From IMG/VR virus record IMGVR_UViG_3300043399_000297, positions 1 through 64,000 of that record: 64,000 bases of DNA. One strand, 5' to 3'. How positions within the stretch are numbered: the stretch's first letter is position 1; every line of letters begins with the position of its first letter. The translations under genes were made by a program, and so were the position numbers. Of the stretch, positions 5,865 to 37,900 are shown in pieces. The notes beneath the pieces are model-generated. The model worked only from the letters and a program-made list of their open reading frames with translations. It made no database searches and was not told the DNA's origin.

Positions 5865-5900
5865 TGAATTGTTCTCCTGATAGAAATGGCTTTGTAAAGT

Positions 5901-5908
5901 TACTTATG
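5901..5908 (-). promoter_or_regulatory. Variant late promoter CATAAGTA
   Basis: One mismatch from TAAATA core, ~35 nt upstream of the 5864 start. Confidence 0.45.
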
Positions 5909-5971
5909 CCGTAGTCAGGAAAACACCGTATTAAGTGCGTATTTTTTACATTTTTAGTATATATAATAGAA

Positions 5972-6205
5972 TTATACTGAAGGGGCGCCGGCACCCTCTT
6001 CAGGCTTAGCACCGTACTGTTTACGAACCTTACCTAAATAAAGTTTCTTTTCATAATTTCTAACGTCAATCATTCTACGTAATTTACGTATTTGCTTTAG
6101 CGTGAGTTTAGTTTTGCGGCTGGTTCGATACACAGGCTTACTATTATCTTGATTAGTATCCTGAAAACCCTGTACGGGCGGATCAAACATTTCGAATAGC
6201 TGCAT
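5972..6205 (-). CDS. Small basic head-assembly protein (gp68-like position)
   Basis: 77 aa, RKTKLTLKQIRKLRRM; directly after portal; own GATAAATA promoter and GGAG RBS. Confidence 0.7.
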   Translation of the reverse strand: MQLFEMFDPPVQGFQDTNQDNSKPVYRTSRKTKLTLKQIRKLRRMIDVRNYEKKLYLGKVRKQYGAKPEEGAGAPSV

Positions 6206-6226
6206 TTAAAATATCTCCGTATTAGA

Positions 6227-6234
6227 TATTTATC
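6227..6234 (-). promoter_or_regulatory. Late promoter GATAAATA
   Basis: T4 late-promoter-like (TATAAATA) octamer in a 31-bp intergenic gap. Confidence 0.7.
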
Positions 6235-6236
6235 TT

Positions 6237-12094: not shown

Positions 12095-15000
12095 TCAAAC
12101 CCTCATTGCTCTTAATGTTTTTTGTTTAGTGTATTTGTTTTTCTTAGCAATCTCTAATACCTGATCAATCTTTGCTAACACCATGTATCTCATATCATTG
12201 TCATTTTCTATTATTTTTTCTATAGTCAATCCCAGATTTCCTATTATAGGCATCACTGGTTTATCAGATGATGAAATAATGTCTGCTAAGATTTCTTCAG
12301 TATTTTCATCTGCATTCTGTGCTAATCTACTTAATATAGAATTTTTTAATGCCGGGATAATAATTTCAGTGCCGTGCAACTCAATGGGATAACCGCCGGT
12401 AGGGCCTGAATAAAGCCCTCCTGTCCTTGCTATTCCATATCTTTTAGCCATTGTTGCAACTCTATGATCTAAGTCAGCCGTTGTAATTTTACCATCGTGC
12501 GGATTTACATCTAACCCTTTATTTGAGTTATAATATTTTTCCGGTGCTTGTGTTAATACAAAATTATTGTTCCTAGCCGGTAAAAAGATATACCCATATA
12601 ATTTACCAGGCGAAGCTCCTTGCAAATGACTGCGATGAGGAGCCAAGAAAGAATCTACATATTTCATTTGCTGTGCCCTAGGCATTCCCCTCAAGGCACC
12701 GGTTGATGTTCCCATTGCTGCGGCTGTGCTAGGCATAAACTGAATTAGGCCGGTTGCTCCTCCTTTTGGATTTGTAGCAGCAGGATTCAATCCGCTTTCA
12801 GAAGCCATCATTCCCAAAAGATTACCAGGGGCAAAACCATATTTTTGGGAAACTCTGTTAACCTCTGAGAGAAACTCTTTATCTTCTTTCCATGGTCCTC
12901 TAGCTTTTGAAATATCCAGAACATTACCTACGGAGGAAATAGCAGCGCCGGCCATTGAACCTATTGTGCTGGCCGCGGAACTAATAGCATTTCCTGCGGC
13001 AGTTGCTAATCCAACAACTGCCGAAGATATGCCGTTCCCCACTATTTTACCTAAATTCGCAGAGCCTTGTCCGGACAAAATTGACATAGCCACTGCAAAA
13101 TCAAAAAACGCTAAAGCATTTTTAGTGGCGTTGGGACCAAAATTGTATTTCGAAGGGTCACTAAATTTTTGAAAAGCTTCTATAGGACCATCCTGGCTAA
13201 ATAGGTGATTTATAGCAGTTCCTACCATAGAACTAATTTGACTAACTAAATTTCCGGTTCCCTTATAAGATGCCAACGCTTCACTAAACAATCTAAATGC
13301 TGTTGCATTTTCTTGAGTTCGCTTAATATTAATTGGCAAAAATGAGAAGTACAAAAACTGATCAACCGGAGGACGTTGTCCAAAAAATTTCACGGTTGAG
13401 TCAGATATTAATGTAGCTATTTGACCTAGAGTGCTGCCATTTCCCTTAAATGAGAACATGGCACTTGCGTAGTCACTAAATGCCATAGCATTATCTCTTA
13501 CTTTATTAACATTGATATCAAGTGCCTCAAACAATAATAGTTTGTCAAACGGCGGATTCTTTTCGAAGAAATTGCTTACTGCTCGTGCTGCGGCTGATAA
13601 TCCACTTATGCCTTTTAGTAAAGCCATTGCACCCATTGCTTTAGCAAAGGCAATTGCCGCTTCTCCACTTTGCTTAATTTTATCTGGATTTACTCCTGTC
13701 GTCATTGCTTGGAAATTAACTAATTGATCTGCCGCCTTCTCAAGAGAAGATTTTCCACCAAACAGTGTTCCTAGATTGGTAATTGCTTCTAACACGTTTC
13801 CTACACCTAGAGCAATGATTCCAAATCCTATGCCGGCCATCCCTATACCAACGCCTTTAAGATTTTGTCCATCCACTTTGTTAAATGCAGATAGACCTTC
13901 AGCAAATGTAGGTAAAGTCTTTCCTACCATCCAAGTTGCGCCGGCAATGCCGGCTCCTATTTCAGCGATTGCTGCACCTAATGCAGCGGCGCCTAGGGCA
14001 ATTTGACCTGCTGAAGCTGCTGCATTCTTAAATGCTTGCAGTATACCACTTTCATCATTAGTTACATCTTCAGCAATATCGCCACCAATGCCCAATTTAG
14101 CTAGTCGCGAATCTAAAGCTGCGCCGCCCAGGATGTTACCGTGCTTGTCTAATAAATCTTCTTTCCTAAATTTAGGTATAGTAGCGCCTGATACTTTTCC
14201 AAACAGACTAGATCCGGCGGCTAGCCTTATATGTAATTTATTTCTCCGTGAAGATCCAGGTTCTCCGCCGCGTCCTATTAAAGACAAGCCTGCATCTTTA
14301 ATAGACTTAAAAGTGTTTACTACCTTCCCAGCGATTGCAACACCAGACATTATACCTAATATAATACCTAATCCTTTTAGACCGATCTCAATTTCTGGCA
14401 TATGAGTTTTGACAAAAAGTATCGCTTGCGTAACAAGCGGAATCATTTGGTTAATTAATTCGTTTACTTTAGGGGATATAGATTGCATAACTGTATCCCA
14501 ATTCTTACGAATATCACGTTCATAACTTTCTATCTGAGAACGTTCTGCAATCGCGGTATCTTCCTGTCTCTTAGCCTCTTCTAGTTTCGCCTTTTGATCC
14601 GCAGCCATTCTTCTAAAATCAGCAACATTACCTCTACCAAATCTCGCTGCATTTTCTCTGGAGTTATTCCCTATCATATAATAATCTTGAAAGTTTCTAG
14701 ATGCAGCACCCACACTAAAGACTAAACCCTCTGTCTCAGTTTCTGACCTTCTAACCAAATCTCTATTCATTTCAAGTAAATCACCAGTTACATTTTCTCC
14801 TTTACTAAGTCGCGTCATTATACTTAAAAAATTAGGTGCCACTTGTGCTAATTGCGCACTTGAGGCTGTTAACACCGGCGGACCTTTTGTAGATGCAGTT
14901 TCTAATATAGCAGTAGCCATCTTAGGATCAAGTGCTTCAGCAAAGGTTGCCGCTTCTCTTTTAGCATCAATTAATGCTTGAATTTGATCACGTTCTACCC

Positions 15001-15985
15001 CTGTTGTAGCGTTCGCTTTATCTCGCTCTAATTCTGCAATATGGGCCCTAAAATTTTCTTGTTGCATTGCTAGGGCTAATAGATCCTGTTGTTTTTTTGC
15101 ACTTACACCGGTTATCTCCGCCAAAATGTTTAATTTATCAATGTACGCTAGTGAGGCTTTTTGCAATTGTCTAGGACTTTGAGTCATCATTGCCCCGCCT
15201 TCGGCTTGAAGCTTAGCATAATTTGCCATTGTATCTATTAATTCTTCTTGGGTATAACCCATTTTCCTATAATATTGTAAATTCTTGTCACCTACGGCAA
15301 TCATTTGCCCAAATACTTGAACACCTTGCCCTGTTGTTATTCCTAAATTTTTGATGGCAGGGCCCATATCTTCAACTGCTTTGGTCAAATATGTTAATGT
15401 TCCCGAAGACAGATTGGCTTTATGTCCTAAGTCAAGTATGCCTTCAGCACTATTTCCAATTCCGCCGCCCGCTCTAGCAACTTTATCATAACTATCTACT
15501 ATATTATCTTGGAATTTTAAAGAACTTGTTGCCACTTCGCCTATTATACCCACCAGCGACCCGGCTACTTTACCTAATGGGCCAAATATAGATAGTATGC
15601 CGCCGGCAGCTTGAGATAATCCGGTTATCCCGCCGGCATATTTACTCATTCCCGGAGTGCTATCAACTACTGAACTAGCAAAGTTTAAAATGGCATCCTT
15701 ACCTGTTCTCAGTGAGGTAGAAAATTGAGAAGACGCTTCTTCTACTAATCTAGTAGCTTCCTGTGCAGCTTGACTTTTCTTGATATTTCCGGACACTGCA
15801 ACATCGTTTGCGAGCCTTGCTTTTTGTGTATTACTAGTAGCGTTTAATTTATTTTTATTAGAAATATTTACAGAATTCAAAGCGGCGACCTGGCTAGCCA
15901 TAATATTATTTTGTTTGGCAATTAAGTCATTAATTGTAGCAATTTGATCATTCAATTGTGTTAGTAGCTCAGGATCCATTAGCAA
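12095..15985 (-). CDS. Tape-measure-like tail protein with C-terminal lytic transglycosylase (SLT/lysozyme-like) domain
   Basis: Paralog of 8048-12088; MASESGLNPAA (catalytic Glu) and GATGLIQFMP motifs near 12460-12885. Confidence 0.8.
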   Translation of the reverse strand: MLMDPELLTQLNDQIATINDLIAKQNNIMASQVAALNSVNISNKNKLNATSNTQKARLANDVAVSGNIKKSQAAQEATRLVEEASSQFSTSLRTGKDAILNFASSVVDSTPGMSKYAGGITGLSQAAGGILSIFGPLGKVAGSLVGIIGEVATSSLKFQDNIVDSYDKVARAGGGIGNSAEGILDLGHKANLSSGTLTYLTKAVEDMGPAIKNLGITTGQGVQVFGQMIAVGDKNLQYYRKMGYTQEELIDTMANYAKLQAEGGAMMTQSPRQLQKASLAYIDKLNILAEITGVSAKKQQDLLALAMQQENFRAHIAELERDKANATTGVERDQIQALIDAKREAATFAEALDPKMATAILETASTKGPPVLTASSAQLAQVAPNFLSIMTRLSKGENVTGDLLEMNRDLVRRSETETEGLVFSVGAASRNFQDYYMIGNNSRENAARFGRGNVADFRRMAADQKAKLEEAKRQEDTAIAERSQIESYERDIRKNWDTVMQSISPKVNELINQMIPLVTQAILFVKTHMPEIEIGLKGLGIILGIMSGVAIAGKVVNTFKSIKDAGLSLIGRGGEPGSSRRNKLHIRLAAGSSLFGKVSGATIPKFRKEDLLDKHGNILGGAALDSRLAKLGIGGDIAEDVTNDESGILQAFKNAAASAGQIALGAAALGAAIAEIGAGIAGATWMVGKTLPTFAEGLSAFNKVDGQNLKGVGIGMAGIGFGIIALGVGNVLEAITNLGTLFGGKSSLEKAADQLVNFQAMTTGVNPDKIKQSGEAAIAFAKAMGAMALLKGISGLSAAARAVSNFFEKNPPFDKLLLFEALDINVNKVRDNAMAFSDYASAMFSFKGNGSTLGQIATLISDSTVKFFGQRPPVDQFLYFSFLPINIKRTQENATAFRLFSEALASYKGTGNLVSQISSMVGTAINHLFSQDGPIEAFQKFSDPSKYNFGPNATKNALAFFDFAVAMSILSGQGSANLGKIVGNGISSAVVGLATAAGNAISSAASTIGSMAGAAISSVGNVLDISKARGPWKEDKEFLSEVNRVSQKYGFAPGNLLGMMASESGLNPAATNPKGGATGLIQFMPSTAAAMGTSTGALRGMPRAQQMKYVDSFLAPHRSHLQGASPGKLYGYIFLPARNNNFVLTQAPEKYYNSNKGLDVNPHDGKITTADLDHRVATMAKRYGIARTGGLYSGPTGGYPIELHGTEIIIPALKNSILSRLAQNADENTEEILADIISSSDKPVMPIIGNLGLTIEKIIENDNDMRYMVLAKIDQVLEIAKKNKYTKQKTLRAMRV

Positions 15986-16067: not shown

Positions 16068-16892
16068 ATGAATAATAACCCACTTAGACAATATTTTAGG
16101 AGACCGGCAGTTTACCTAAGGCTCCCTTCAGGAGGAAAAGACTATGCTGAGGGTATAATTGATTTACCAGAAAACGGAGAAATTCCGGTATACCCAATGA
16201 CCGCAATTGATGAAATTACTACGAGAACACCAGACGCATTATTCAATGGAACGGCATTAGCAGAACTCATTAAAAGCTGTATTCCAAATATCAAAGATCC
16301 ATGGGCAGTAAGCAGTAATGATATGGATGCTATATTAATATCAATCAAAGCAGCATCAGGCGGCGACACATTGGATATCGATACGGTTTGTCCTGCTTGC
16401 GAAGAATCAAATATTTACGGTATAAATTTATTGTCGATGCTTGCCAGTCTTAAACCTAGTGACTATGAAAAAGAATTAGAATCCGGTGAACTATTCATTA
16501 AATTTAAACCACTCAAGTATAAAGATATGAATGATGCTGCGATCGGTCAATTTGAACTGCAAAGAACTTTAGTCACCTTAGACAATATTGAATCAGAAGA
16601 AGAAAGAAATGCAGCAGGAAAACAAGCACTAGAGAATATCACAAATCTTACAATGGAAATACTCAGCAAGACTATCGATTATATCAAGACTCCTACTATT
16701 ATAGTCCGAGAACAGGAGTATATTCTTGATTTCTTAAGAAACTGTGATAAGAATATTTTCACTGCAATAAAAGATTTTAATACGGAACTCAAAGCTGCTA
16801 GTGAAATTAAACCAATACATATCACTTGCGCAAGCTGCGGTCACGAATACGATCAACAATTTACATTAAGTCCCGTAGATTTTTTCGAATAA
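16068..16892 (+). CDS. gp26: Baseplate hub assembly protein (gp26-like; possibly a tail assembly chaperone)
   Basis: LPSGG, PMTAIDE, two CxxC motifs (CPAC, CASC), C-terminal FF; GAGG RBS. Confidence 0.8.
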   Translation: MNNNPLRQYFRRPAVYLRLPSGGKDYAEGIIDLPENGEIPVYPMTAIDEITTRTPDALFNGTALAELIKSCIPNIKDPWAVSSNDMDAILISIKAASGGDTLDIDTVCPACEESNIYGINLLSMLASLKPSDYEKELESGELFIKFKPLKYKDMNDAAIGQFELQRTLVTLDNIESEEERNAAGKQALENITNLTMEILSKTIDYIKTPTIIVREQEYILDFLRNCDKNIFTAIKDFNTELKAASEIKPIHITCASCGHEYDQQFTLSPVDFFE

Positions 16893-16929
16893 GGCTTCTT
16901 AATTCTAGCCCCGAAGATATCCAGAAGCT
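16880..16929 (+). other. Candidate -1 ribosomal frameshift site (T TTT TTC) with downstream stem-loop
   Basis: XXXYYYZ heptamer one codon before the gp26 stop; -1 frame open for 76 codons; stem GGCTTCT (16893-16899)/AGAAGCT (16923-16929) after a 6-nt spacer. Confidence 0.65.
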
Positions 16930-17116
16930 ATTAGAACAATACGAAAAAGAAATTGAGGGGATTAAGAAGGGCGCATTAACCATGGCTTGGTATATGCGCG
17001 GCGGGGCATCATATGAGGATATCCTCAACATGTCCGACAGCGAGAGAAAGACTATTAACCAAATCATAGAAGATAATTTAGAGATAACTAAAAAGTCTCA
17101 AATGCCCTTCTTTTAA
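16886..17116 (+). CDS. gp51-like baseplate/tail assembly domain, probably expressed as a -1 frameshift extension of gp26
   Basis: WYMRGGASYEDILNMSDSERKTI resembles gp51-type small proteins; protein-like sequence begins right at the slippery site with no ATG until 16982. Confidence 0.65.
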   Translation, partial: RIRLLNSSPEDIQKLLEQYEKEIEGIKKGALTMAWYMRGGASYEDILNMSDSERKTINQIIEDNLEITKKSQMPFF

Positions 17117-17579
17117 CAGTTGATCTTCGATCAACTAGACTCTCACTACGTTCGGTCTACTTTTTTAATTCTGTAAGACAATAACACTGAAGGGATATAC
17201 ATTGCCGGTTTAGAAGCCATGGTAGTGCTCCTCAGAGGCACTACCAAAGTTAGGACTTGCCATGGCCCGTCATCCTTTGCCGTCTATCCCCCGTTAAACT
17301 AGCCCTTAATGCTGTTTAACGTCACCGGTTGCCCTGTAAGATTTGATGGGGCTGTAGTGAAGCTATAAAGTGGAACTCACTTTACTCTTCGGCAACGCAT
17401 GTCCTATAGCATCAAGACAGAATAGCTATAGACTCATTCAAGGTTCGCCTACCTAGCGAGAGCCTTGTCGGTGTTCCCTAGGATCACTCCTAGGCATACT
17501 CCAGAATCCGACCGCATTCATTCGTGGTGCAGTCTCAAGGAGGATCAAAAGATCAATATCGATGTAAAAGGGTTCTGTA
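17117..17579. ncRNA. Candidate large structured non-coding RNA (or structured DNA element), family not recognised
   Basis: 463-bp ORF-free, GC-richer gap between convergent genes tiled by about ten stems, with loop-loop complementarities. Confidence 0.65.
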
Positions 17580-18128
17580 TTAGGTTTCTAAAGTAATAAT
17601 ATTTGTAGTGATATCTTTAGGTGAGCCTGAGTATGCTTTAAGAAGGTCTTTGTTGAGCCTGAAAAAATGTTCGAATTCCATAATAATCCATTCGCCTGAC
17701 TTCTCAGAACGATAATGAATAAAGTTGTCAGCAACCCAAGTCATCTTGGATTCAACTGCTACAAACTTACCCTTACGATTAAACTTCATAAACAATATGT
17801 TACAATCATTATCTTCTGCAACATCCATTAATTGTTTTAACCAAGTGTCTATGACCTTACATTCACCTGTTGGTAATAGATGAAAGGGGAAATCTGCATA
17901 ACTTTTGCATTCTGCGTTGAACAGTTTAAATGTTTCACCGGGCACTATATCTCCCTTGAAACTTCTTACTTGTCCTTCGTGTAAATACTGTTTTCTTGAT
18001 TGATTCTTGCCACCAACATATGCCCCAGAACCCGGGGCACGAATAAAACTCTCATTATAAGTTTTGGTTAAAAACTGAGCAATCTCACGCTCAAAGCTTG
18101 AACCTTTATTTTTACTCGGTGATGGCAT
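17580..18128 (-). CDS. Holliday junction resolvase, PD-(D/E)xK type
   Basis: KGSSFERE...GDIV...ECKSY catalytic pattern; adjacent to gp46/47. Confidence 0.8.
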   Translation of the reverse strand: MPSPSKNKGSSFEREIAQFLTKTYNESFIRAPGSGAYVGGKNQSRKQYLHEGQVRSFKGDIVPGETFKLFNAECKSYADFPFHLLPTGECKVIDTWLKQLMDVAEDNDCNILFMKFNRKGKFVAVESKMTWVADNFIHYRSEKSGEWIIMEFEHFFRLNKDLLKAYSGSPKDITTNIITLET

Positions 18129-18166: not shown

Positions 18167-19933
18167 TTATTCTATGTCTGCTGCTGTGTTGTATGTGGTA
18201 AAACCGTTTTCTTTGACAACCTTAAGAACACTAGGAACACGACCTGCAAGTTCTTCTCTATGACTGACAAGCCAAATGCTCTTGTTACGCCTGCGCGACA
18301 TATCTTTGAGAATAGCCATACTATTCTCAACGCCTATACTATCCATACCTGAGTCGATCAACTCGTCAATAAACAGTGTGTTGATCGGGAAATATAGATT
18401 TTCCCAAACATCTCTAAATGCGAAACTAAGCCCAAGAATCAATCGGTTCCGCTCACCGCGTGATAAGTTGTCAAAGTCAAGTTCACGCCCGAGTTCAGTA
18501 ATTTCAACCGACAAATCGTTCTTGAATACGACCGTATGTGGCAATCCTATCTTGTCTAAGTAATGTGTTAATCTTGCATTCAAATAACTCAAGTTCTGAT
18601 CAATGATCTTCTTACGAACAAAACTATCCTTACTAGTTAATATGTCCAAAAGAAACTTCAAGTGATCACCATATTTAGTTAGTTCATTGATTTTATCAAA
18701 AGTAACTTCCTGCAATGCTTGATTTTCCATATCAACAATCTGTTCTTGATATGGGTCAGTCTCATCTGTCTTATTCTCAATCTGCTGTAACAGATTAGCA
18801 ACTGTAGTCTTATGCTCAATTGCTTCGGCTTCAGTTTCATAATGTGTAGTTGGTTTCTCGCCCAAAATAAACAATGAATTTTTATTTTTTTCTAATTCAT
18901 TTTGGGTTTGGACAAGATCATCAACTGCTGTAGCAAGAAGTTCACGCTTACTGTTTATAACAGCAGAGTGATTTTCATCGTGAAAGTCTTGACCACAAGC
19001 ATAACACTTGTTATCTTCAAGTGTCTTAATTTCAGCTTCAAGTTTACTAACAATAGCCGTTTCTTTTTTCAATGTTGTTTCAAGGCGATTGATAGTAGAG
19101 TTGATGTTATTTAATTCTACTTTGTTTGCTTCGTAAATCTTGAGGTCATAATGAGATTGCAACTCATTAGTAATATCAATTTTCGATAGTTCATCGTATC
19201 GAAGTGCTAATAATTCAAGGTCTTCTTTATGTTTAGCTTCCCAAAGCCTTTGTCTACGCTTCAAGCTATCAATTTGCTCTTGAACACGTTTGTTGGCTTC
19301 TTCAACGGCTTTGTTTCTAAACTCTTCCTGCTGAATATTATCCTTGTTCAGCCTAATCTTTTCTTTGATTAAATCTGCTTTCTCAGAAAGCAAGGTGATG
19401 CCCAACAATTGTTCGATAACATTTCTTTGATCGTTTGCCTTCATTGACAAGAATGGCTCGCTGTATGTATTCAATGCAACAATATGCTTGAACATATCAG
19501 GAGTCATCCCTATAGCGTGTTCAATTGCTAACTGAGTTTCCTTGTTCTCGCCCTGCGCTTCATTCTTATCTTCTTTATTGTTTTGCAAATTGTTGTTTAC
19601 ATAGAACCTAAGAATATGCGGCTTTCTTCCGCGCTCAATCTTATAATCAATGCCGTTACTAGAAAACTCTAAAGTAACCATCATATTTTTGGCATTGGTT
19701 CGATTGATAAGGTTATCTTTACGAATCTGATTGATAGGGGAGCCGAACAATACATAGCTCAACCCTTGAATCAATGTAGTTTTGCCAGTACCATTTCTAG
19801 CACCGTCACCGCCCAAATCTATGTTCTCGCCTAAAATAAGCGTGAGTTCACTAGTATCAAAGTTTACTGCTTGGCAAACCGCCCCGATTGAAAGAAAATT
19901 ACGCAGTGTTATGTTTTTAAATGTAATACTCAT
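18167..19933 (-). CDS. gp46: Recombination endonuclease ATPase subunit (gp46/SbcC/Rad50-like)
   Basis: Walker A GARNGTGKT, zinc hook CYAC, signature LSRGE, Walker B FIDE, H-loop VSH. Confidence 0.95.
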   Translation of the reverse strand: MSITFKNITLRNFLSIGAVCQAVNFDTSELTLILGENIDLGGDGARNGTGKTTLIQGLSYVLFGSPINQIRKDNLINRTNAKNMMVTLEFSSNGIDYKIERGRKPHILRFYVNNNLQNNKEDKNEAQGENKETQLAIEHAIGMTPDMFKHIVALNTYSEPFLSMKANDQRNVIEQLLGITLLSEKADLIKEKIRLNKDNIQQEEFRNKAVEEANKRVQEQIDSLKRRQRLWEAKHKEDLELLALRYDELSKIDITNELQSHYDLKIYEANKVELNNINSTINRLETTLKKETAIVSKLEAEIKTLEDNKCYACGQDFHDENHSAVINSKRELLATAVDDLVQTQNELEKNKNSLFILGEKPTTHYETEAEAIEHKTTVANLLQQIENKTDETDPYQEQIVDMENQALQEVTFDKINELTKYGDHLKFLLDILTSKDSFVRKKIIDQNLSYLNARLTHYLDKIGLPHTVVFKNDLSVEITELGRELDFDNLSRGERNRLILGLSFAFRDVWENLYFPINTLFIDELIDSGMDSIGVENSMAILKDMSRRRNKSIWLVSHREELAGRVPSVLKVVKENGFTTYNTAADIE

Positions 19934-20124
19934 TTGTTATCTTTGTCTGTTCTGTTATGTGCATCCATAAGAACTTGCAATTCGTTGTTAAGCTTTTGTA
20001 AATATGGCTTACCAAATTTTTCTAATCTTTCAATAGGATAGTTCTTAATTGCTTGTGTATAGTTATCAATCTCAATTTTCTTTAATTGAATTTGATGTTC
20101 TAAGTTATATGCATTCCTCTTCAT
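19930..20124 (-). CDS. Hypothetical protein (64 aa)
   Basis: ATGA overlaps on both sides, coupled between gp47 and gp46. Confidence 0.65.
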   Translation of the reverse strand: MKRNAYNLEHQIQLKKIEIDNYTQAIKNYPIERLEKFGKPYLQKLNNELQVLMDAHNRTDKDNK

Positions 20125-21137
20125 AGGCTACGATAAATCTCTAACAATAGTTTAGGATCAAAAAACTCACTTTCAATAGCAGTGATTTGATCAATAACAA
20201 TTTGGTCAACGGTTTCAAACTTGATTTCGCCGGGTGCAAGATCAATACTATGCTGCTCTAACTTTATTGGAATCAATGACATTTCTCTAATACTGTGTTT
20301 TGGAATCAATGTTTCACGAATAAAGTTGGCTTCTTCATATGAAATATCAATATCAAGATGCACTCTAACACTACTTTTAGGAAGTAGCAAGCCTTCTGGG
20401 TTATCTAATACTTCACTTAACTTGTATACACGATATAATGGTTGCCCAGGCCAAGAATGAAATATTGGTTCTTCGCCCCATTCTAATATCATCATACCGC
20501 GTTGATCATCGCCTGCGTCAGCATAGTTGTGCGGGAAAGCATTACCGATATACCAGATGTTATTTCTAGCTTGTCGTTTATGAAAGTGACCACTGAATAC
20601 TTTTTCAAATCCAGTGACATCATCATCTTTGAGTTCGCCGTGGTCGGGCATCTGAACCATTGCGTTCATATAGAAGTTAGGTAGCTCTAAATGACTGAAC
20701 AAATATTTGCCACTCATCTTAGCTAACTTTTTGTAGTCATCGCCCACTAACCAGGGAGCGACAACTACATCACCTTCTTTGAACCAATCGTTAACAATTA
20801 TAACATTTGATAAATGTCTGGCCCACTCGATACTATGTATGTCACGCTTATCTCTATAATAGAGATCGTGATTGCCGGGAATAAAGAAAACTTTATCAAA
20901 ATTTTGATTCAGTTTTTCTAATGCTCGTAAGCCATACTGTAATGTATGGATATTAATACTGGCTCTATGATGATTATAATCACCTAAAAAGAAACAAGTA
21001 TCACAATTTTCTTCTTTTGCCTTACTAATAAACCAATCTACAAACTCAGTGCAGTCAGTATTATGTTGTATACTATTGGACTTTAATCCAAAATGAATAT
21101 CGGTGAAGACAGCAGCCTTCTTAAACAAATTCGCCAT
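20121..21137 (-). CDS. gp47: Recombination endonuclease nuclease subunit (gp47/SbcD/Mre11-like)
   Basis: Metallophosphoesterase motifs DIH, GD, GNHD, GHFH. Confidence 0.95.
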   Translation of the reverse strand: MANLFKKAAVFTDIHFGLKSNSIQHNTDCTEFVDWFISKAKEENCDTCFFLGDYNHHRASINIHTLQYGLRALEKLNQNFDKVFFIPGNHDLYYRDKRDIHSIEWARHLSNVIIVNDWFKEGDVVVAPWLVGDDYKKLAKMSGKYLFSHLELPNFYMNAMVQMPDHGELKDDDVTGFEKVFSGHFHKRQARNNIWYIGNAFPHNYADAGDDQRGMMILEWGEEPIFHSWPGQPLYRVYKLSEVLDNPEGLLLPKSSVRVHLDIDISYEEANFIRETLIPKHSIREMSLIPIKLEQHSIDLAPGEIKFETVDQIVIDQITAIESEFFDPKLLLEIYRSL

Positions 21138-34942: not shown

Positions 34943-34948
34943 TGATAT

Positions 34949-37900
34949 ATGGCTAGAATCAGAACACTAAACTTTTTACCTGAAGTTTTTCAAACCCCAA
35001 CCAACAGCCAATTTTTGGCAGCTACACTTGATCAGATAGTAAGTGAGCCTAATACTGTTAAGCAACAAGGCTATATCGGCAGTAAGTTAGGTTATGGAGT
35101 GAATGCTCTCGACTACTATGTTACTGAACCAACTAAAACCCGAGTTGACTATCAGTTAGATCCAAGCGTTGTTTTCACAAAGCCCAATGAAACTATTGCA
35201 CAAGATTTTATCACATATCCCGGTATACTTGACGCATTAAAATTGCAGGGAAGCATCACTGATGATAACAGTGAGCTTTTCCAAAGTCAATTTTATTCTT
35301 GGGACAGCTTTGTTGATCTGGACAAGTTGGTTAACTATCAAGAATATTATTGGTTGCCAGAAGGTCCACCTAGTGTTTCTGTTTCTCCCGGATTAGTATA
35401 TTCAGTTGAAGAATACATCGTAACAGATTATGACAATCAATATGGAATTAACGAGAAGACAGCACAGAATAGTGGTCCGTTAAATCCAACATTAACGTTA
35501 TTGCGCGGCGGATCATATACCTTTTCTGTTAATCAAAACAGTCAGTTCTTTATTCAAACTTTGCCGGGCACTAGCGGATATAGCCCCATTCAGCCTAACA
35601 TCCCTACACGAGAAGTATATGGAGTAGAAAACAATGGCGCGTCAACAGGATTTGTAACATTTGATGTTCCCTTAAAAGATGCACAAGACGAATATGATTT
35701 CCCGGGTAATAATATAGTAGATTTAATTTGCACTACTCCGTTTAGTCAGGTCAATGGTCAAATACTAGGCACGTTTACTGATCCAGCGACCGGTGTAACA
35801 TATAATGGATTGAGCGACATTGACGGCATTACCGGTATCGATGGTTTACGAATTATGTTCTATAACACCGGTATCTCAAATGAAGTAGGATATATCAATT
35901 CATATTACGGTGAGACTTCATATGACGTAAATGATGATTATTTTACTTCTCCATTGACAGTAGAAATAAGTTCTACCACTAATAGTGGTTCATATCTAAC
36001 TCTTGGAACAGGGTATACCACTGATCAGTTAATCGTTAATCAAACTATTACTTTTGATACTCCTACACTCGGCGGGCTATCACAAAATGTAGTTTATTTT
36101 GTAAAAGAAATATTAAATTCCACAGACTTTACAATCAGTGAATATATTGAAGGCCCTGCTCTCAGCGTAAATGATGATGCTGGAACAATGATTGCTAACA
36201 TTAATCAAGGACAATATCAACAGGGATTTTATAGCACAGTAAATGATAACTTCTATCGCGTACAATTAGTAGGAACTGGCCCGAATCCTACAATTCGTTT
36301 ATTACCAGATGGCACTATCCCCACTAATCAAAAGATAACACCACAATTCGGTGTTACTTATATTAATCGTCCTTTCTATCGCAATGTAAACGGTGTAATT
36401 GGGTTAATTCCTATTATTACTGCACCATTAGATGTGTTATACTATCAAGATGGCACTAACCCAAATAAAGTTGGGGAAATTCGTTTAGTTGACACTAACG
36501 CAGACAATTATATTAATGTCGATACTCAGATTATCGGCAAAGTAAATTATACTAGTCCAAACGGTGTTGCATTTACAAACGGATTAAAGATAATATTTCA
36601 AGGTAATATTTTCCCTAGTAGATATTTAAATCAAGAATATTATGTCGAGGGAGTTGGAACTAGTATTGAATTGGTTCCTGTATTAAGTCTAGAGTGCCCT
36701 GAGAAGTTTACAATTGGAGAATATATTCCCTGGGATATGTTTGGATTTGACGCAGGCCCCTGGGACATTAGTTTAAATATTCCTGTTTTACCTGACTATA
36801 TTACTATTGCAAGAAACAGCATTAACAAAAATGCCTGGTCGCGCAGCAATCGTTGGTTCCATACTGATATCATCACTCAGACGGCAAACTACAATAATAA
36901 TCCAGACATTTTAACTAGGTATGCAACACTAGAGAACAAGGCGAAAAGGCCAATCATAGAGTTCTACCCTAACATCAAATTGTTTGATAGCGGATCTGTT
37001 GGTAAAAACGCAGTTGATTTCTTCGACACACGAACAACAGATGCTTTTAGTGAGGTTGCGGGATTATATAATTATTATCCTGACGTAGAAGTTTATACAA
37101 AAAATACAGCAGTAATTGACAGCACAATAACTAGCCCTGTATCATCAAGCAGTTTGATTGTTGGTAAGACATATGTTATTACCAGTAAGGGCACGACAAA
37201 CTGGAATACGGCTGCCGGGACAACAGGCTTTTATTATGTAGAAGGGCAAATATTTGTTTGTGAGTCTACTAGTGTTGGAACAGGAACAGCTACTGAACTA
37301 GCATATGGGACAACTATTACCATACCCACAGCAGATATTAATGGTACATTCCAAGAAGGAATGTATGTTGCAGATTATAATAATGTACTTCCTGTTAACA
37401 CACAACTCGATAACATACAAATTGTAGGGTCAGATACTATATTAACCGTTTCCTGGGATCAACCTCAAAATGTTGATACTACTACTACGGTTATTGTAGG
37501 ATCAGATAGCACAGTAAATGCATACGCAGTATATCCGGGAGCAAGAATTGTTTTTGCTAATGATAGTGATCTACAAGTAAGAAATAAAATCTATGTTGTA
37601 GATTATGCAACAATTGGAACAAGTTCACAGCCTATTATTGTATTAAGTCCTGCTGAAGATAGTATGCCATTACCTGATGAAATGATTGCAGTTAATAGAG
37701 GGTATAATTATCAAGGTAAAAGTTTTTACTATAATGGTATTATGTGGGATGAAGCGCAATTAAAAATTGATGTTAATCAACCTCCCAAGTTTGATGTGTT
37801 TGATAACAATAATATAAGTTTCGGTGACACTGATGTTTATAATAGCAGCACCTTCAAGGGATCAACATTATTTGCCTATCAGATAGGTGATGGTCCTGAT

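What the first reader, a model, noticed from the sequence alone, without database searches (positions are those of the whole stretch)
17117..17579. Unrecognised ~460-nt multi-stem, probably pseudoknotted non-coding element between convergent genes
Seen: this is by far the largest ORF-free gap in the window, it lies between two convergent stop codons (no promoter needed), is GC-richer than other gaps and is tiled by stems: GGGATA 17192/TATCCC 17285; TGGTAGTGC 17220/GCACTACCA 17238; AAGT 17247/ACTT 17255; CGTTAAAC 17292/GTTTAACG 17314; GTTGCC 17328/GGCAAC 17391 enclosing GAAG/CTTC and TAAAGTG 17366/CACTTTA 17378; CTATAGC 17404/GCTATAG 17425; CAAGG 17439/CCTTG 17463 with TCGC/GCGA; GTCGG 17467/CCGAC 17508 enclosing CCTAGGA 17477/TCCTAGG 17488. 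Unpaired segments are complementary to one another (TTGATG 17343/CATCAA 17410; AGCCC 17301/GGGCT 17349; ATCCT 17272/AGGAT 17541), suggesting pseudoknots and long-range closure. Inference: a large ornate phage ncRNA (conceptually like the phage-associated GOLLD/ROOL RNAs, but I do not recognise the family), possibly co-transcribed with the resolvase-gp46-gp47 recombination operon; alternatively a structured DNA origin or recombination site. Strand is not resolved.
Basis: partly seen in the sequence, partly recalled or inferred. Interest (0 to 1): 0.88.

Follow-up and report, generated by a model that had tools for sequence, protein, structure and literature searches.

The report
New pseudoknotted RNA in lake jumbo phages
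The gap holds a conserved, roughly 380-base folded non-coding RNA that matches no catalogued RNA family and always sits directly after a DNA-cutting enzyme gene in at least 240 lake-water phage contigs; what it does is not known.

Summary
The gap at 17117-17579 is real. It is the largest ORF-free stretch in the window and has 46% GC against 38% for the window. It holds a conserved structured RNA of about 380 nt (about 17201-17579).

- **Distribution:** Homologues occur in at least 240 IMG/VR and metagenome contigs. The position never changes: directly 3' of a PD-(D/E)XK endonuclease gene, and convergent with a small baseplate-module ORF.
- **Structure:** Nine helices are supported by compensatory changes. 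In the P4-P8 domain, 27 of 38 pairs covary and 98.7% of cells are paired.
- **Strand:** The RNA is on the minus strand. G-U pairs outnumber A-C cells 163 to 60 (sign test p=0.0003), and the minus-strand fold is more stable in 60 of 64 homologues. Only about 32 nt separate the endonuclease stop from helix P2, and hairpin P1 fills them. The RNA is therefore probably made as a 3' extension of the endonuclease-gp46-gp47 transcript.
- **Novelty:** There is no Rfam 15 hit, no tRNA or tmRNA, no conserved ORF, no copy in 185,579 bacterial and archaeal genomes, and no excess of antisense targets.

It is a new family of large phage ncRNA whose biochemical function is unknown.

The parts
17201..17579 (-). 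Whole conserved structured RNA element. RNA sense is the minus strand, with the 5' end at high coordinates.
   Evidence: nhmmer profile hit at 17574-17192, E=8e-94, single copy in the window. blastn and alignments against relatives. Strand.
17543..17554 (-). P1 hairpin (GAUC UUUU GAUC). It abuts P2. Its sequence differs between lineages but the hairpin is kept.
   Evidence: Alignment A1 columns 90-112. Mutual-information pairs ranked 17, 34 and 42. Coordinates.
17499..17542 (-). P2: CUCC 17542-17539 pairs with GGAG 17502-17499, and AG 17535-17534 with CU 17504-17503, with a UUG bulge. It encloses hairpin P2a (UGCA 17531-17528 with UGCG 17516-17513).
   Evidence: Compensatory changes in three P2 pairs (UA/CG swaps in 1-3 sequences each), and G-U in 33 of 64 sequences at one P2a pair.
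17477..17494 (-). P3 hairpin: CCUAGGA, GUGA loop, UCCUAGG.
   Evidence: Five predicted pairs, each with 12-29 sequences changed on both sides.
17469..17473 (-). P4, 5' strand (CACCG). Closes the four-way junction.
   Evidence: Pairs with 17323-17327. The outer pair shows UA 33, CG 13, AU 5, UG 7.
17323..17327 (-). P4, 3' strand (CGGUG).
17439..17467 (-). P5 hairpin: CAAGG/CCUUG plus UCG/CGA.
   Evidence: 100% of cells paired; 6 of 8 pairs have changes on both sides (helices 2 and 3).
17399..17437 (-). P6 hairpin: AUG/CAU plus UCUAUAGC/GCUAUAGG. Its loop supplies one strand of PK1.
   Evidence: 10 of 11 pairs have changes on both sides (helix 4).
17328..17396 (-). P7 (GUUGCC/GGCAAC), P7a (GAAG 17390-17387 with CUUC 17362-17359), the variable hairpin P7b (17384-17366), and an invariant internal loop ACUACAG..CCCAU..UUACAG (17358-17334).
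   Evidence: CG to UA swap in 7 sequences at the inner P7 pair. The internal loop is invariant in 64 sequences.
17292..17321 (-). P8 hairpin: CGUUAAAC..AGC with GCU.GUUUAACG.
   Evidence: 9 of 9 pairs have changes on both sides. Many G-U pairs in minus-strand sense (helix 6).
17415..17420 (-). PK1, 5' strand (CUGUCU, in the P6 loop).
   Evidence: Pairs with 17280-17285. 95-100% canonical. Five of six pairs covary. U-G in 18 sequences at one pair.
17280..17285 (-). PK1, 3' strand (AGACGG).
17348..17351 (-). PK2, 5' strand (CCCC here, UCCC in most relatives), in the P7 internal loop.
   Evidence: Pairs with 17288-17291. 100% canonical. One pair shows UA 40, CG 12, AU 6, GC 4.
17288..17291 (-). 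PK2, 3' strand (GGGG here, GGGA in most relatives).
17257..17275 (-). Conserved unpaired segment GGAUGACGGGCCAUGGCAA in the linker between P8 and P9. No pairing partner was found.
   Evidence: Conservation in A1 columns 455-474. No mutual-information partner.
17220..17246 (-). P9 hairpin: UGGUAGUGC with GCACUACCA. Nearly invariant.
   Evidence: Alignment A1. This motif alone retrieved 119 of 120 further contigs that carry the whole element.
17201..17219 (-). Conserved 3' tail UGGCUUCUAAACCGGCAAU. Conservation ends after CGGCAAU.
   Evidence: A1 columns 519-538. An alternative pairing with the P7 5' strand was examined by eye on A1 and does not covary.
17563..17578 (-). Motif ACAGAACCC..UACA between the endonuclease stop and P1. 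Present only in a sub-family that includes the window.
   Evidence: A1 columns 60-77 in about 14 of 64 sequences. Unexplained.
17580..18128 (-). PD-(D/E)XK endonuclease gene (182 aa). Its stop codon lies directly 5' of the RNA.
   Evidence: Pfam PF24608, 8.7e-24; PHROG 244. Distance from stop to P2 is a median 32 nt in 81 distinct loci.
17118..17136 (.). Covarying hairpin directly after the stop of the 96-aa ORF. It lies outside the RNA core and its strand is unresolved.
   Evidence: Alignment of the gaps in relatives: AGTTGATC / AGACAAAC / AGATGTCC variants keep the pairing.
17136..17166 (+). Hairpin TAGAC..GTCTA followed by T6. It looks like the terminator of the plus-strand baseplate operon and separates that operon from the RNA.
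   Evidence: Sequence. The long loop means the consensus scan did not list it.

Best explanation
The gap encodes a previously unclassified structured non-coding RNA of about 380 nt on the minus strand. It starts about 10 nt after the stop codon of the PD-(D/E)XK endonuclease gene. It is most likely transcribed as the 3' extension of the endonuclease-gp46-gp47 (Rad50/Mre11-like) recombination operon.

The fold has nine helices:
- A 5' arm (P1-P3).
- A four-way junction (P4 closing P5, P6 and P7).
- Two 3' hairpins (P8, P9).
- One short 3' segment (GGGA-AU-AGACRR, 17280-17291) that pins the fold together by forming two pseudoknots at once, one with the P6 loop and one with the invariant internal loop of P7.

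I infer that it acts as a folded RNA that is recognised by a partner, either a protein or another copy of itself. I do not think it acts by antisense pairing, by coding, or as a plain terminator.

Shown here: the element exists, it is conserved, its secondary structure and pseudoknots hold, it is strand-specific, its position is fixed, it is non-coding, and it matches no known family. Inferred: co-transcription, possible processing into a stable RNA, and action through a partner. Its biochemical function is not established.
For: - **Conservation:** 70-80% DNA identity across relatives whose flanking proteins are only 45-80% identical.
- **Distribution:** At least 120 IMG/VR contigs and at least 120 metagenome contigs, retrieved with two independent motifs.
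- **Fixed position:** In every locus with room, the endonuclease is on the 5' side on the same strand and the 96-aa ORF is on the 3' side on the opposite strand.
- **Structure:** 37 of 50 RNAalifold pairs have compensatory changes. In the P4-P8 domain, 98.7% of cells are paired. 27 of 38 pairs are compensatory. The covariation score is 0.551, against 0.188 for shuffles (0 of 500 reach it) and below 0.09 for slid partners.
- **Pseudoknots:** Found by mutual information, then confirmed by pair counts.
- **Strand:** In helices predicted on both strands, G-U cells in minus sense number 163 against 60 A-C cells. 33 pairs favour minus and 9 favour plus, p=0.0003. The minus-sense fold is more stable in 60 of 64 homologues.
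- **Attachment to the endonuclease side:** Genes inserted in six relatives fall between the 96-aa ORF and the RNA, never between the RNA and the endonuclease.
- **No room for a promoter:** The stop-to-P2 distance has a median of 32 nt and is filled by P1.
- **Non-coding:** There is no conserved open frame, and indel lengths are not multiples of three.
- **Not antisense:** No excess of complementary sites in the 64-kb window.
- **Constraint beyond pairing:** Long invariant unpaired stretches suggest tertiary folding or a binding partner.
- **Transcription:** Contigs from RNA libraries cover relatives of the element.
Against: - There is no direct evidence of a transcript for this phage. There is no strand-specific read evidence and no mapped 5' or 3' ends. 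The RNA-library contigs carry no direction and also cover the flanking genes.
- No canonical intrinsic terminator follows the RNA on the minus strand.
- A few conserved G-U pairs would form only on the plus strand, for example inside P5.
- The partner is unknown. The only attempt to test binding to the endonuclease was not run by the tool.
- Nothing tested here separates a cis role as a 3' UTR element from a trans-acting role.
Confidence: 0.7

Rival explanations
1. The element is a cis-acting 3' UTR. The folded RNA stays attached to the endonuclease-gp46-gp47 mRNA. It protects the mRNA from 3'-to-5' exonucleases, or it stops or insulates transcription between the two convergent operons. It has no role in trans.
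For: It begins directly after the stop codon and sits between convergent operons. No independent promoter was found. The 3' end carries a very stable, nearly invariant hairpin, P9.
Against: Protection or termination needs only a hairpin. Here about 380 nt, two pseudoknots and more than 100 invariant unpaired positions are kept, while the flanking proteins have drifted to about 50% identity. Separate terminator-like hairpins already sit at 17118-17166.
Confidence: 0.2
2. The RNA is a dedicated cofactor, regulator or decoy of the adjacent PD-(D/E)XK endonuclease or of the gp46/gp47 recombination nuclease. For example, its four-way junction might mimic a Holliday junction, or it might direct or restrain the nuclease, as the HEARO/omega RNA does for IscB.
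For: It is adjacent to the endonuclease gene, on the same strand, in every one of about 190 loci with enough flanking DNA. The core is a four-way junction. There is a precedent for a large RNA linked to a nuclease gene turning out to be its guide (HEARO with IscB; from my own knowledge).
Against: No binding test could be run. Two loci with endonuclease homologues at 57-59% identity lack the RNA. Constant gene order in related phages can be simple inheritance. No variable guide-like segment with identifiable targets was found.
Confidence: 0.08
3. The RNA is transcribed from the plus strand, from its own promoter between the baseplate-operon terminator and the conserved core.
For: The plus strand also folds well (z=-4.0). 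A few conserved G-U pairs form only on the plus strand. A terminator-like hairpin with a T-run ends the upstream plus-strand operon before the element, so an independent start would be needed and is conceivable.
Against: The G-U versus A-C imbalance is 163 to 60 in favour of minus. P8, P2a and PK1 become continuous only with minus-strand G-U pairs. The minus-sense fold is more stable in 60 of 64 homologues. The region upstream on the plus strand varies in length and sequence and has no conserved promoter.
Confidence: 0.05
4. The element acts at the DNA level, as a replication origin, a recombination hotspot or a packaging site whose inverted repeats work as DNA.
For: It lies next to recombination genes. 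Inverted repeats are abundant.
Against: Double-stranded DNA gives no reason for a strand-specific excess of G-U-compatible changes. It also gives no reason for covarying loop-to-single-strand pseudoknots. There are no repeated protein-binding motifs or AT-rich unwinding block inside the conserved core, which is richer in GC than its surroundings.
Confidence: 0.02

Closest known systems
GOLLD and ROOL RNAs (large ornate ncRNAs often carried by phages and prophages)
   Same: It is a large, multi-helix, pseudoknotted ncRNA of unknown function. It is carried by phages, was found by comparative genomics of environmental sequence, and has long conserved unpaired regions.
   Different: There is no sequence or structure match to their Rfam models. 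At about 380 nt it is shorter than ROOL (about 580 nt) and GOLLD (about 800 nt); those lengths are from my own knowledge. It is not next to tRNA genes. It sits at a fixed position directly 3' of a nuclease gene in lake jumbo myoviruses. Whether it forms multimers is untested.
HEARO / omega RNA of IscB, and the TnpB omega (reRNA)
   Same: It is a large structured RNA in constant genetic linkage with a small nuclease gene. As with the TnpB RNA, it lies at or after the 3' end of the nuclease ORF on the same strand.
   Different: The linked nuclease is a PD-(D/E)XK fold protein in a phage recombination module, not an HNH/RuvC transposon nuclease. There are no transposon ends and no identifiable guide segment. 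There is no HEARO hit in Rfam. RNA-guided activity is pure speculation here.
3'-UTR-derived bacterial sRNAs and protective 3' structures
   Same: It is probably made from the 3' end of an operon transcript, with no promoter of its own outside the coding sequence.
   Different: Those RNAs are typically 50-150 nt, have simple hairpins, and act by seed pairing (from my own knowledge). This element is about 380 nt, has two pseudoknots, and shows no excess of targets.
Candidate structured RNAs predicted in bulk from IMG/VR (Fremin et al. 2023, PMC10690425)
   Same: The data source (IMG/VR intergenic regions) and the kind of evidence are the same. An element this abundant may be among their 8,495 unnamed candidates.
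   Different: This could not be checked. No supplementary files are held for that paper, and its text does not mention this context. The Rfam 15 copy searched here has no model that matches the element.

Membership tests
Any Rfam 15 family (including GOLLD, ROOL, HEARO, OLE, raiA, group I and II introns, RNase P, tmRNA, 6S, known ribozymes and riboswitches) | A match to the family's covariance model at or near its gathering score. | tested here: not met
   No hit at gathering score in the 64-kb window. At E<=10 on 16900-17800 there were only four chance snoRNA or intron fragments of 13-16 bits. At E<=1 there was nothing at the element in seven diverse homologous loci.
tRNA / tmRNA | A cloverleaf, or a tRNA-like domain with a tag reading frame, detectable by ARAGORN. 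| tested here: not met
   ARAGORN finds only tRNA-Phe at 34946-35027 in the window.
Group I / group II self-splicing intron | Interrupts a gene, so that the flanking exons restore a reading frame or an RNA gene. | tested here: not met
   The element lies between two complete convergent ORFs that end in stop codons. The downstream flank on the RNA strand is a variable AT-rich spacer plus hairpins. There is no intron model hit.
GOLLD / ROOL-type ornate phage RNA (as a functional kind) | Forms RNA-only homo-oligomeric assemblies. | not testable with these tools
   This needs native gels, SEC-MALS or cryo-EM of the transcript.
Nuclease-associated guide RNA (HEARO/omega-like) | Constant linkage to a nuclease gene. 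| tested here: met
   The endonuclease is on the 5' side on the same strand in every locus with room, in two independent collections.
Nuclease-associated guide RNA (HEARO/omega-like) | Physical binding to the nuclease, and a variable guide segment that matches targets. | tested here: inconclusive
   The complex prediction was not run by the tool. No excess of complementary sites was found in the window. Targets outside the window were not searched.
Protein-coding gene or pseudogene | A conserved open frame, with indels in multiples of three. | tested here: not met
   The longest stop-free stretch has a median of 50-60 codons, with a minimum of 27-40 depending on strand. Indel lengths in four variable regions are spread over all residues mod 3.
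Intrinsic terminator / simple 3' stabiliser | A GC-rich hairpin followed by a U-run on the transcribed strand. | tested here: not met
   No terminator-like site lies in 17117-17579 on either strand. The only hairpin with a T-run (17136-17166) is on the plus strand and outside the conserved core.

The most novel reading that the evidence does not exclude
The RNA is the nucleic-acid subunit of a new ribonucleoprotein built with the adjacent PD-(D/E)XK endonuclease, or with the gp46/gp47 Rad50/Mre11-like nuclease. In that complex it would guide, gate or decoy the nuclease during phage recombination or host-DNA attack. Alternatively, it is a new ribozyme class. Either reading would explain the invariant joining regions, the double pseudoknot and the unbroken linkage to the nuclease gene.
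Probability: 0.1. Interest if true: 0.92.

Novelty: new variant of a known kind. Interest (0 to 1): 0.74.

Why it matters
Large RNAs with complex, conserved folds are rare. Those studied so far have mostly turned out to be ribozymes, ribonucleoprotein scaffolds, guide RNAs or self-assembling cages.

This one adds a well-supported new family. It has at least 240 examples, nine covarying helices and two pseudoknots. It comes from a little-studied group, uncultured lake jumbo myoviruses distantly related to Pseudomonas phage PA5oct.

Its genetic context points to a specific experiment. The RNA is fused to the 3' end of a recombination nuclease operon. That makes one question directly testable: do phage recombination or anti-host nucleases use an RNA partner?

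At about 380 nt it is also a tractable target for cryo-EM and chemical probing.

Tried and rejected
- **Rfam:** No usable hit at gathering or at E-value thresholds, on the window and on seven homologous loci.
- **ARAGORN:** No tRNA or tmRNA in the gap.
- **GenBank phages:** megablast and blastn found nothing, or only chance matches of 23-29 nt. The nearest cultured relative by gp46, Pseudomonas phage PA5oct at 50% identity, has neither the endonuclease nor the RNA at that junction.
- **Bacterial and archaeal genomes:** A motif scan of 185,579 species genomes gave 0 hits, so the RNA is not borrowed from a host RNA at this level of similarity.
All three pseudoknots and the stems GGGATA/TATCCC and GTCGG/CCGAC are rejected on pair counts.
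- **Alternative partners for the conserved GGCAA motifs:** The 3' tail and the P8-P9 linker were compared by eye on alignment A1 with the single UUGCC strand of P7. They do not change in the seven sequences where P7 covaries, so this pairing is rejected.
- **5' leader with 3' tail:** No mutual-information signal.
- **Antisense function:** Complementary 10-12-mers in the window occur at chance level.
- **Coding:** Rejected.
- **Sequencing runs:** The source is a freshwater metagenome. RNA-library contigs of relatives overlap the element but give no strand or end information. This is inconclusive.
- **Endonuclease-RNA complex prediction:** The tool did not fold it, so it is not evidence either way.
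- **Literature:** Three full-text searches and two papers turned up no description of this RNA. The supplementary tables of the IMG/VR structured-RNA survey are not held.
- **Promoter and terminator scan:** Nothing convincing inside the gap.
Full report
**Setting.** The window comes from a T4-like jumbo myovirus assembled from a freshwater metagenome. The same sequence is part of a 244-kb IMG/VR contig. The genes around the finding are:
- 12095-15985 (-): a 1296-aa protein with a lytic transglycosylase domain.
- 16068-16892 (+): a T4 baseplate-hub-like protein.
- 16826-17116 (+): a 96-aa ORF with no family match.
- 17580-18128 (-): a PD-(D/E)XK endonuclease. It matches Pfam PF24608 and PHROG 244, which is annotated as a RusA-like resolvase.
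- 18167-19933 (-): a gp46/SbcC/Rad50-like protein.
- 19930-20124 (-): a 64-aa ORF.
- 20121-21137 (-): a gp47/SbcD/Mre11-like protein.

By gp46, the nearest cultured relatives are Pseudomonas jumbo phage PA5oct and its kin, at only 50% identity.

**Checking the observation.** The stretch 17117-17579 is the longest part of the window not covered by any ORF of at least 80 aa. Its GC is 0.46, against 0.383 for the window and 0.28-0.38 for the other gaps (profile). It lies between convergent stop codons. As RNA it folds about four standard deviations better than dinucleotide shuffles on either strand. So the raw observation holds.

**Relatives.** A search with the endonuclease protein found 22 IMG/VR loci. 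Twenty of them carry DNA similar to the gap at 70-80% identity over window positions of about 17190-17546. Their endonucleases are 68-76% identical to the window's.

The same motif found nothing in one genome each of 185,579 bacterial and archaeal species.

A second, independent motif (hairpin P9) returned at least 120 metagenome contigs. Of these, 119 carry the whole element.

In every locus with enough flanking DNA the order is the same: baseplate hub (+), 96-aa ORF (+), element, endonuclease (-), gp46 (-). The flanking proteins are as little as 45-60% identical.

Two loci with more distant endonuclease homologues (L021, L022) lack the element, and so does the PA5oct region I fetched, which has no endonuclease gene at that junction. 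The window has a single copy.

**It is not coding and not a known RNA.** No reading frame stays open across homologues. Length differences in four variable regions are spread over all residues mod 3. Rfam 15 gives nothing at gathering score. At E<=10 it gives only four chance fragments of 13-16 bits. At E<=1 it gives nothing at the element in seven diverse homologous loci. ARAGORN finds no tRNA or tmRNA there.

**Structure.** RNAalifold on a MAFFT alignment of 64 sequences clustered at under 93% identity predicts 50 pairs. In 37 of them, at least one sequence has changed both sides and kept the pair.

I built a covariance model of the P4-P8 domain (178 positions). It scores all 64 representatives at 152-185 bits. 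On the resulting alignment:
- 98.7% of cells are standard pairs, against 80% for column shuffles and 29-38% for slid partners.
- 27 of 38 pairs show changes on both sides.
- The covariation score is 0.551, against 0.188 for shuffles and below 0.09 for slid partners.
- None of 500 shuffles reaches any of the five measures.

In window coordinates, read 5' to 3' on the minus strand, the helices are:
- P1: 17554-17543.
- P2: 17542-17499, enclosing hairpin P2a.
- P3: 17494-17477.
- P4: 17473-17469 pairs with 17327-17323 and closes a four-way junction that holds P5, P6 and P7.
- P5: 17467-17439.
- P6: 17437-17399.
- P7, with P7a and P7b: 17396-17328.
- P8: 17321-17292.
- P9: 17246-17220.
- A conserved 3' tail that ends at CGGCAAU (17208-17201).

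**Pseudoknots.** A mutual-information scan with average-product correction over all column pairs recovered the helices. It also turned up two long-range interactions.
- PK1 pairs CUGUCU in the P6 loop (17420-17415) with AGACGG (17285-17280). It is 95-100% canonical and five of its six pairs covary.
- PK2 pairs the (U/C)CCC in the invariant internal loop of P7 (17351-17348) with GGG(A/G) (17291-17288). It is 100% canonical, and one pair shows UA 40, CG 12, AU 6, GC 4.

The two 3' strands are only two nucleotides apart. One short segment therefore ties the P6 loop and the P7 internal loop together.

So do the stems GGGATA/TATCCC and GTCGG/CCGAC. AAGT/ACTT lies in a variable linker.

**Strand.** Watson-Crick helices look the same on both strands, but G-U pairs do not.
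- In the 73 pairs that RNAalifold predicts on both strands of the unfitted MAFFT alignment, 163 cells are G-U in minus sense. Only 60 are A-C, which would be G-U in plus sense.
- 33 pairs lean to minus and 9 to plus, sign test p=0.0003. An earlier count on 86 sequences gave 151 against 55.
- P8, P2a and PK1 are continuous only if minus-strand G-U pairs are allowed.
- The minus-sense fold is more stable in 60 of 64 homologues.

The RNA is therefore on the strand of the endonuclease-gp46-gp47 genes.

Three further points tie it to that operon. The gap from the endonuclease stop codon to the first base of P2 has a median of 32 nt in 81 distinct loci, and hairpin P1 fills it. In six relatives, extra plus-strand genes are inserted: a GIY-YIG-like 165-aa ORF, by my reading of its N-terminal motif, and a GDSL/SGNH-like 247-aa ORF. 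They always fall between the 96-aa ORF and the RNA, never between the RNA and the endonuclease. Finally, a hairpin plus T-run that would end the plus-strand operon lies before the conserved core (17136-17166).

**What it probably does.**
- Shown: this is a conserved, strand-specific, pseudoknotted RNA-level element, fixed to the 3' end of a nuclease operon.
- Inferred: it is co-transcribed with that operon, because there is no room for a promoter outside the coding sequence and no promoter-like site.
- Inferred: it acts through its three-dimensional fold. Long unpaired stretches are invariant across relatives whose proteins have diverged to about 50% identity. Examples are ACUACAG..CCCAU..UUACAG in P7, GGAUGAC.GGGCAUGGCAA between P8 and P9, and CAUGCGUUGC.
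- Inferred: plain termination or protection of the 3' end would not need this much structure.
- Inferred: antisense action is unlikely, because complementary sites in the window are at chance level.

I could not separate a processed trans-acting RNA from a cis-acting 3' UTR. I could not test binding to the endonuclease either, because the complex job was not folded. Contigs from RNA libraries show that relatives of the element turn up in metatranscriptomes. They have no direction, and they also cover the flanking genes.

**Comparison with known systems.**
- It resembles GOLLD and ROOL in kind: a large, ornate, phage-borne RNA of unknown function. It is not a member of either family. It is also shorter and sits in a different, fixed context.
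- Its constant linkage to a nuclease gene recalls HEARO/omega RNA with IscB and the TnpB omega RNA. However, the nuclease fold, the genetic setting and the lack of any recognisable guide all differ.
- It may be one of the thousands of unnamed candidates predicted from IMG/VR (PMC10690425). That could not be checked.

**Verdict.** The element is a new family of large structured phage RNA, with the strand, the boundaries and two pseudoknots now defined. What remains open is its function, and that can be tested directly with the experiments listed under next steps.

Noticed in passing
window 17118-17136: A hairpin directly after the stop of the 96-aa ORF covaries across relatives (AGTTGATC / AGACAAAC / AGATGTCC arms). 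It keeps a conserved CTTCG loop (CGAAG on the other strand). It lies outside the RNA core, and its strand and role (terminator of either operon) are unresolved.
   Followed up: partly
window 17563-17578 (minus strand): The motif ACAGAACCC..UACA lies between the endonuclease stop and P1. It is conserved only in a sub-family of about 14 of 64 representatives, including the window. Other lineages have UAAAAAUUUGUU there instead. It might be a processing or promoter-like signal.
   Followed up: no
L064, L067, L107, L119 and L092, L097 (between the 96-aa ORF and the element): Six relatives carry an extra plus-strand gene of about 700-850 nt at this junction. One type is a 165-aa ORF whose N-terminus looks like a GIY-YIG homing endonuclease. 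The other is a 247-aa ORF with a GDSL/SGNH-like motif. The junction looks like a hotspot for mobile or accessory genes.
   Followed up: partly
window 5865-6236: This is the second-largest internal ORF-free gap (372 nt, GC 0.36). There was no Rfam hit at gathering score. It was not examined further.
   Followed up: no
window 34946-35027 (minus strand): A single tRNA-Phe (GAA) gene is the only tRNA in the 64-kb window.
   Followed up: no
window 16826-16892: The 96-aa ORF, as called from its first TTG, overlaps the 3' end of the baseplate-hub gene by 67 nt in another frame. tblastn shows its protein is conserved at 52-71% identity in relatives. It has no Pfam, PHROG or NCBIfam match. Its true start is probably further downstream.
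   Followed up: partly
L017 7871-8136 (minus strand): There is a weak Rfam match to isrG (28 bits, E=0.0012, far below the gathering score of 100) elsewhere in a relative's locus. It is probably chance.
   Followed up: no
run X3 laid on window 17310-17520: In one small RNA library (91 million letters), the only contig that lands on the 3-kb stretch is a 230-nt piece inside the element (15 differing letters and one gap over 211 nt). This might mean the RNA outlasts the flanking mRNA, but it is a single contig from a run that was chosen because it shares words with the element.
   Followed up: no
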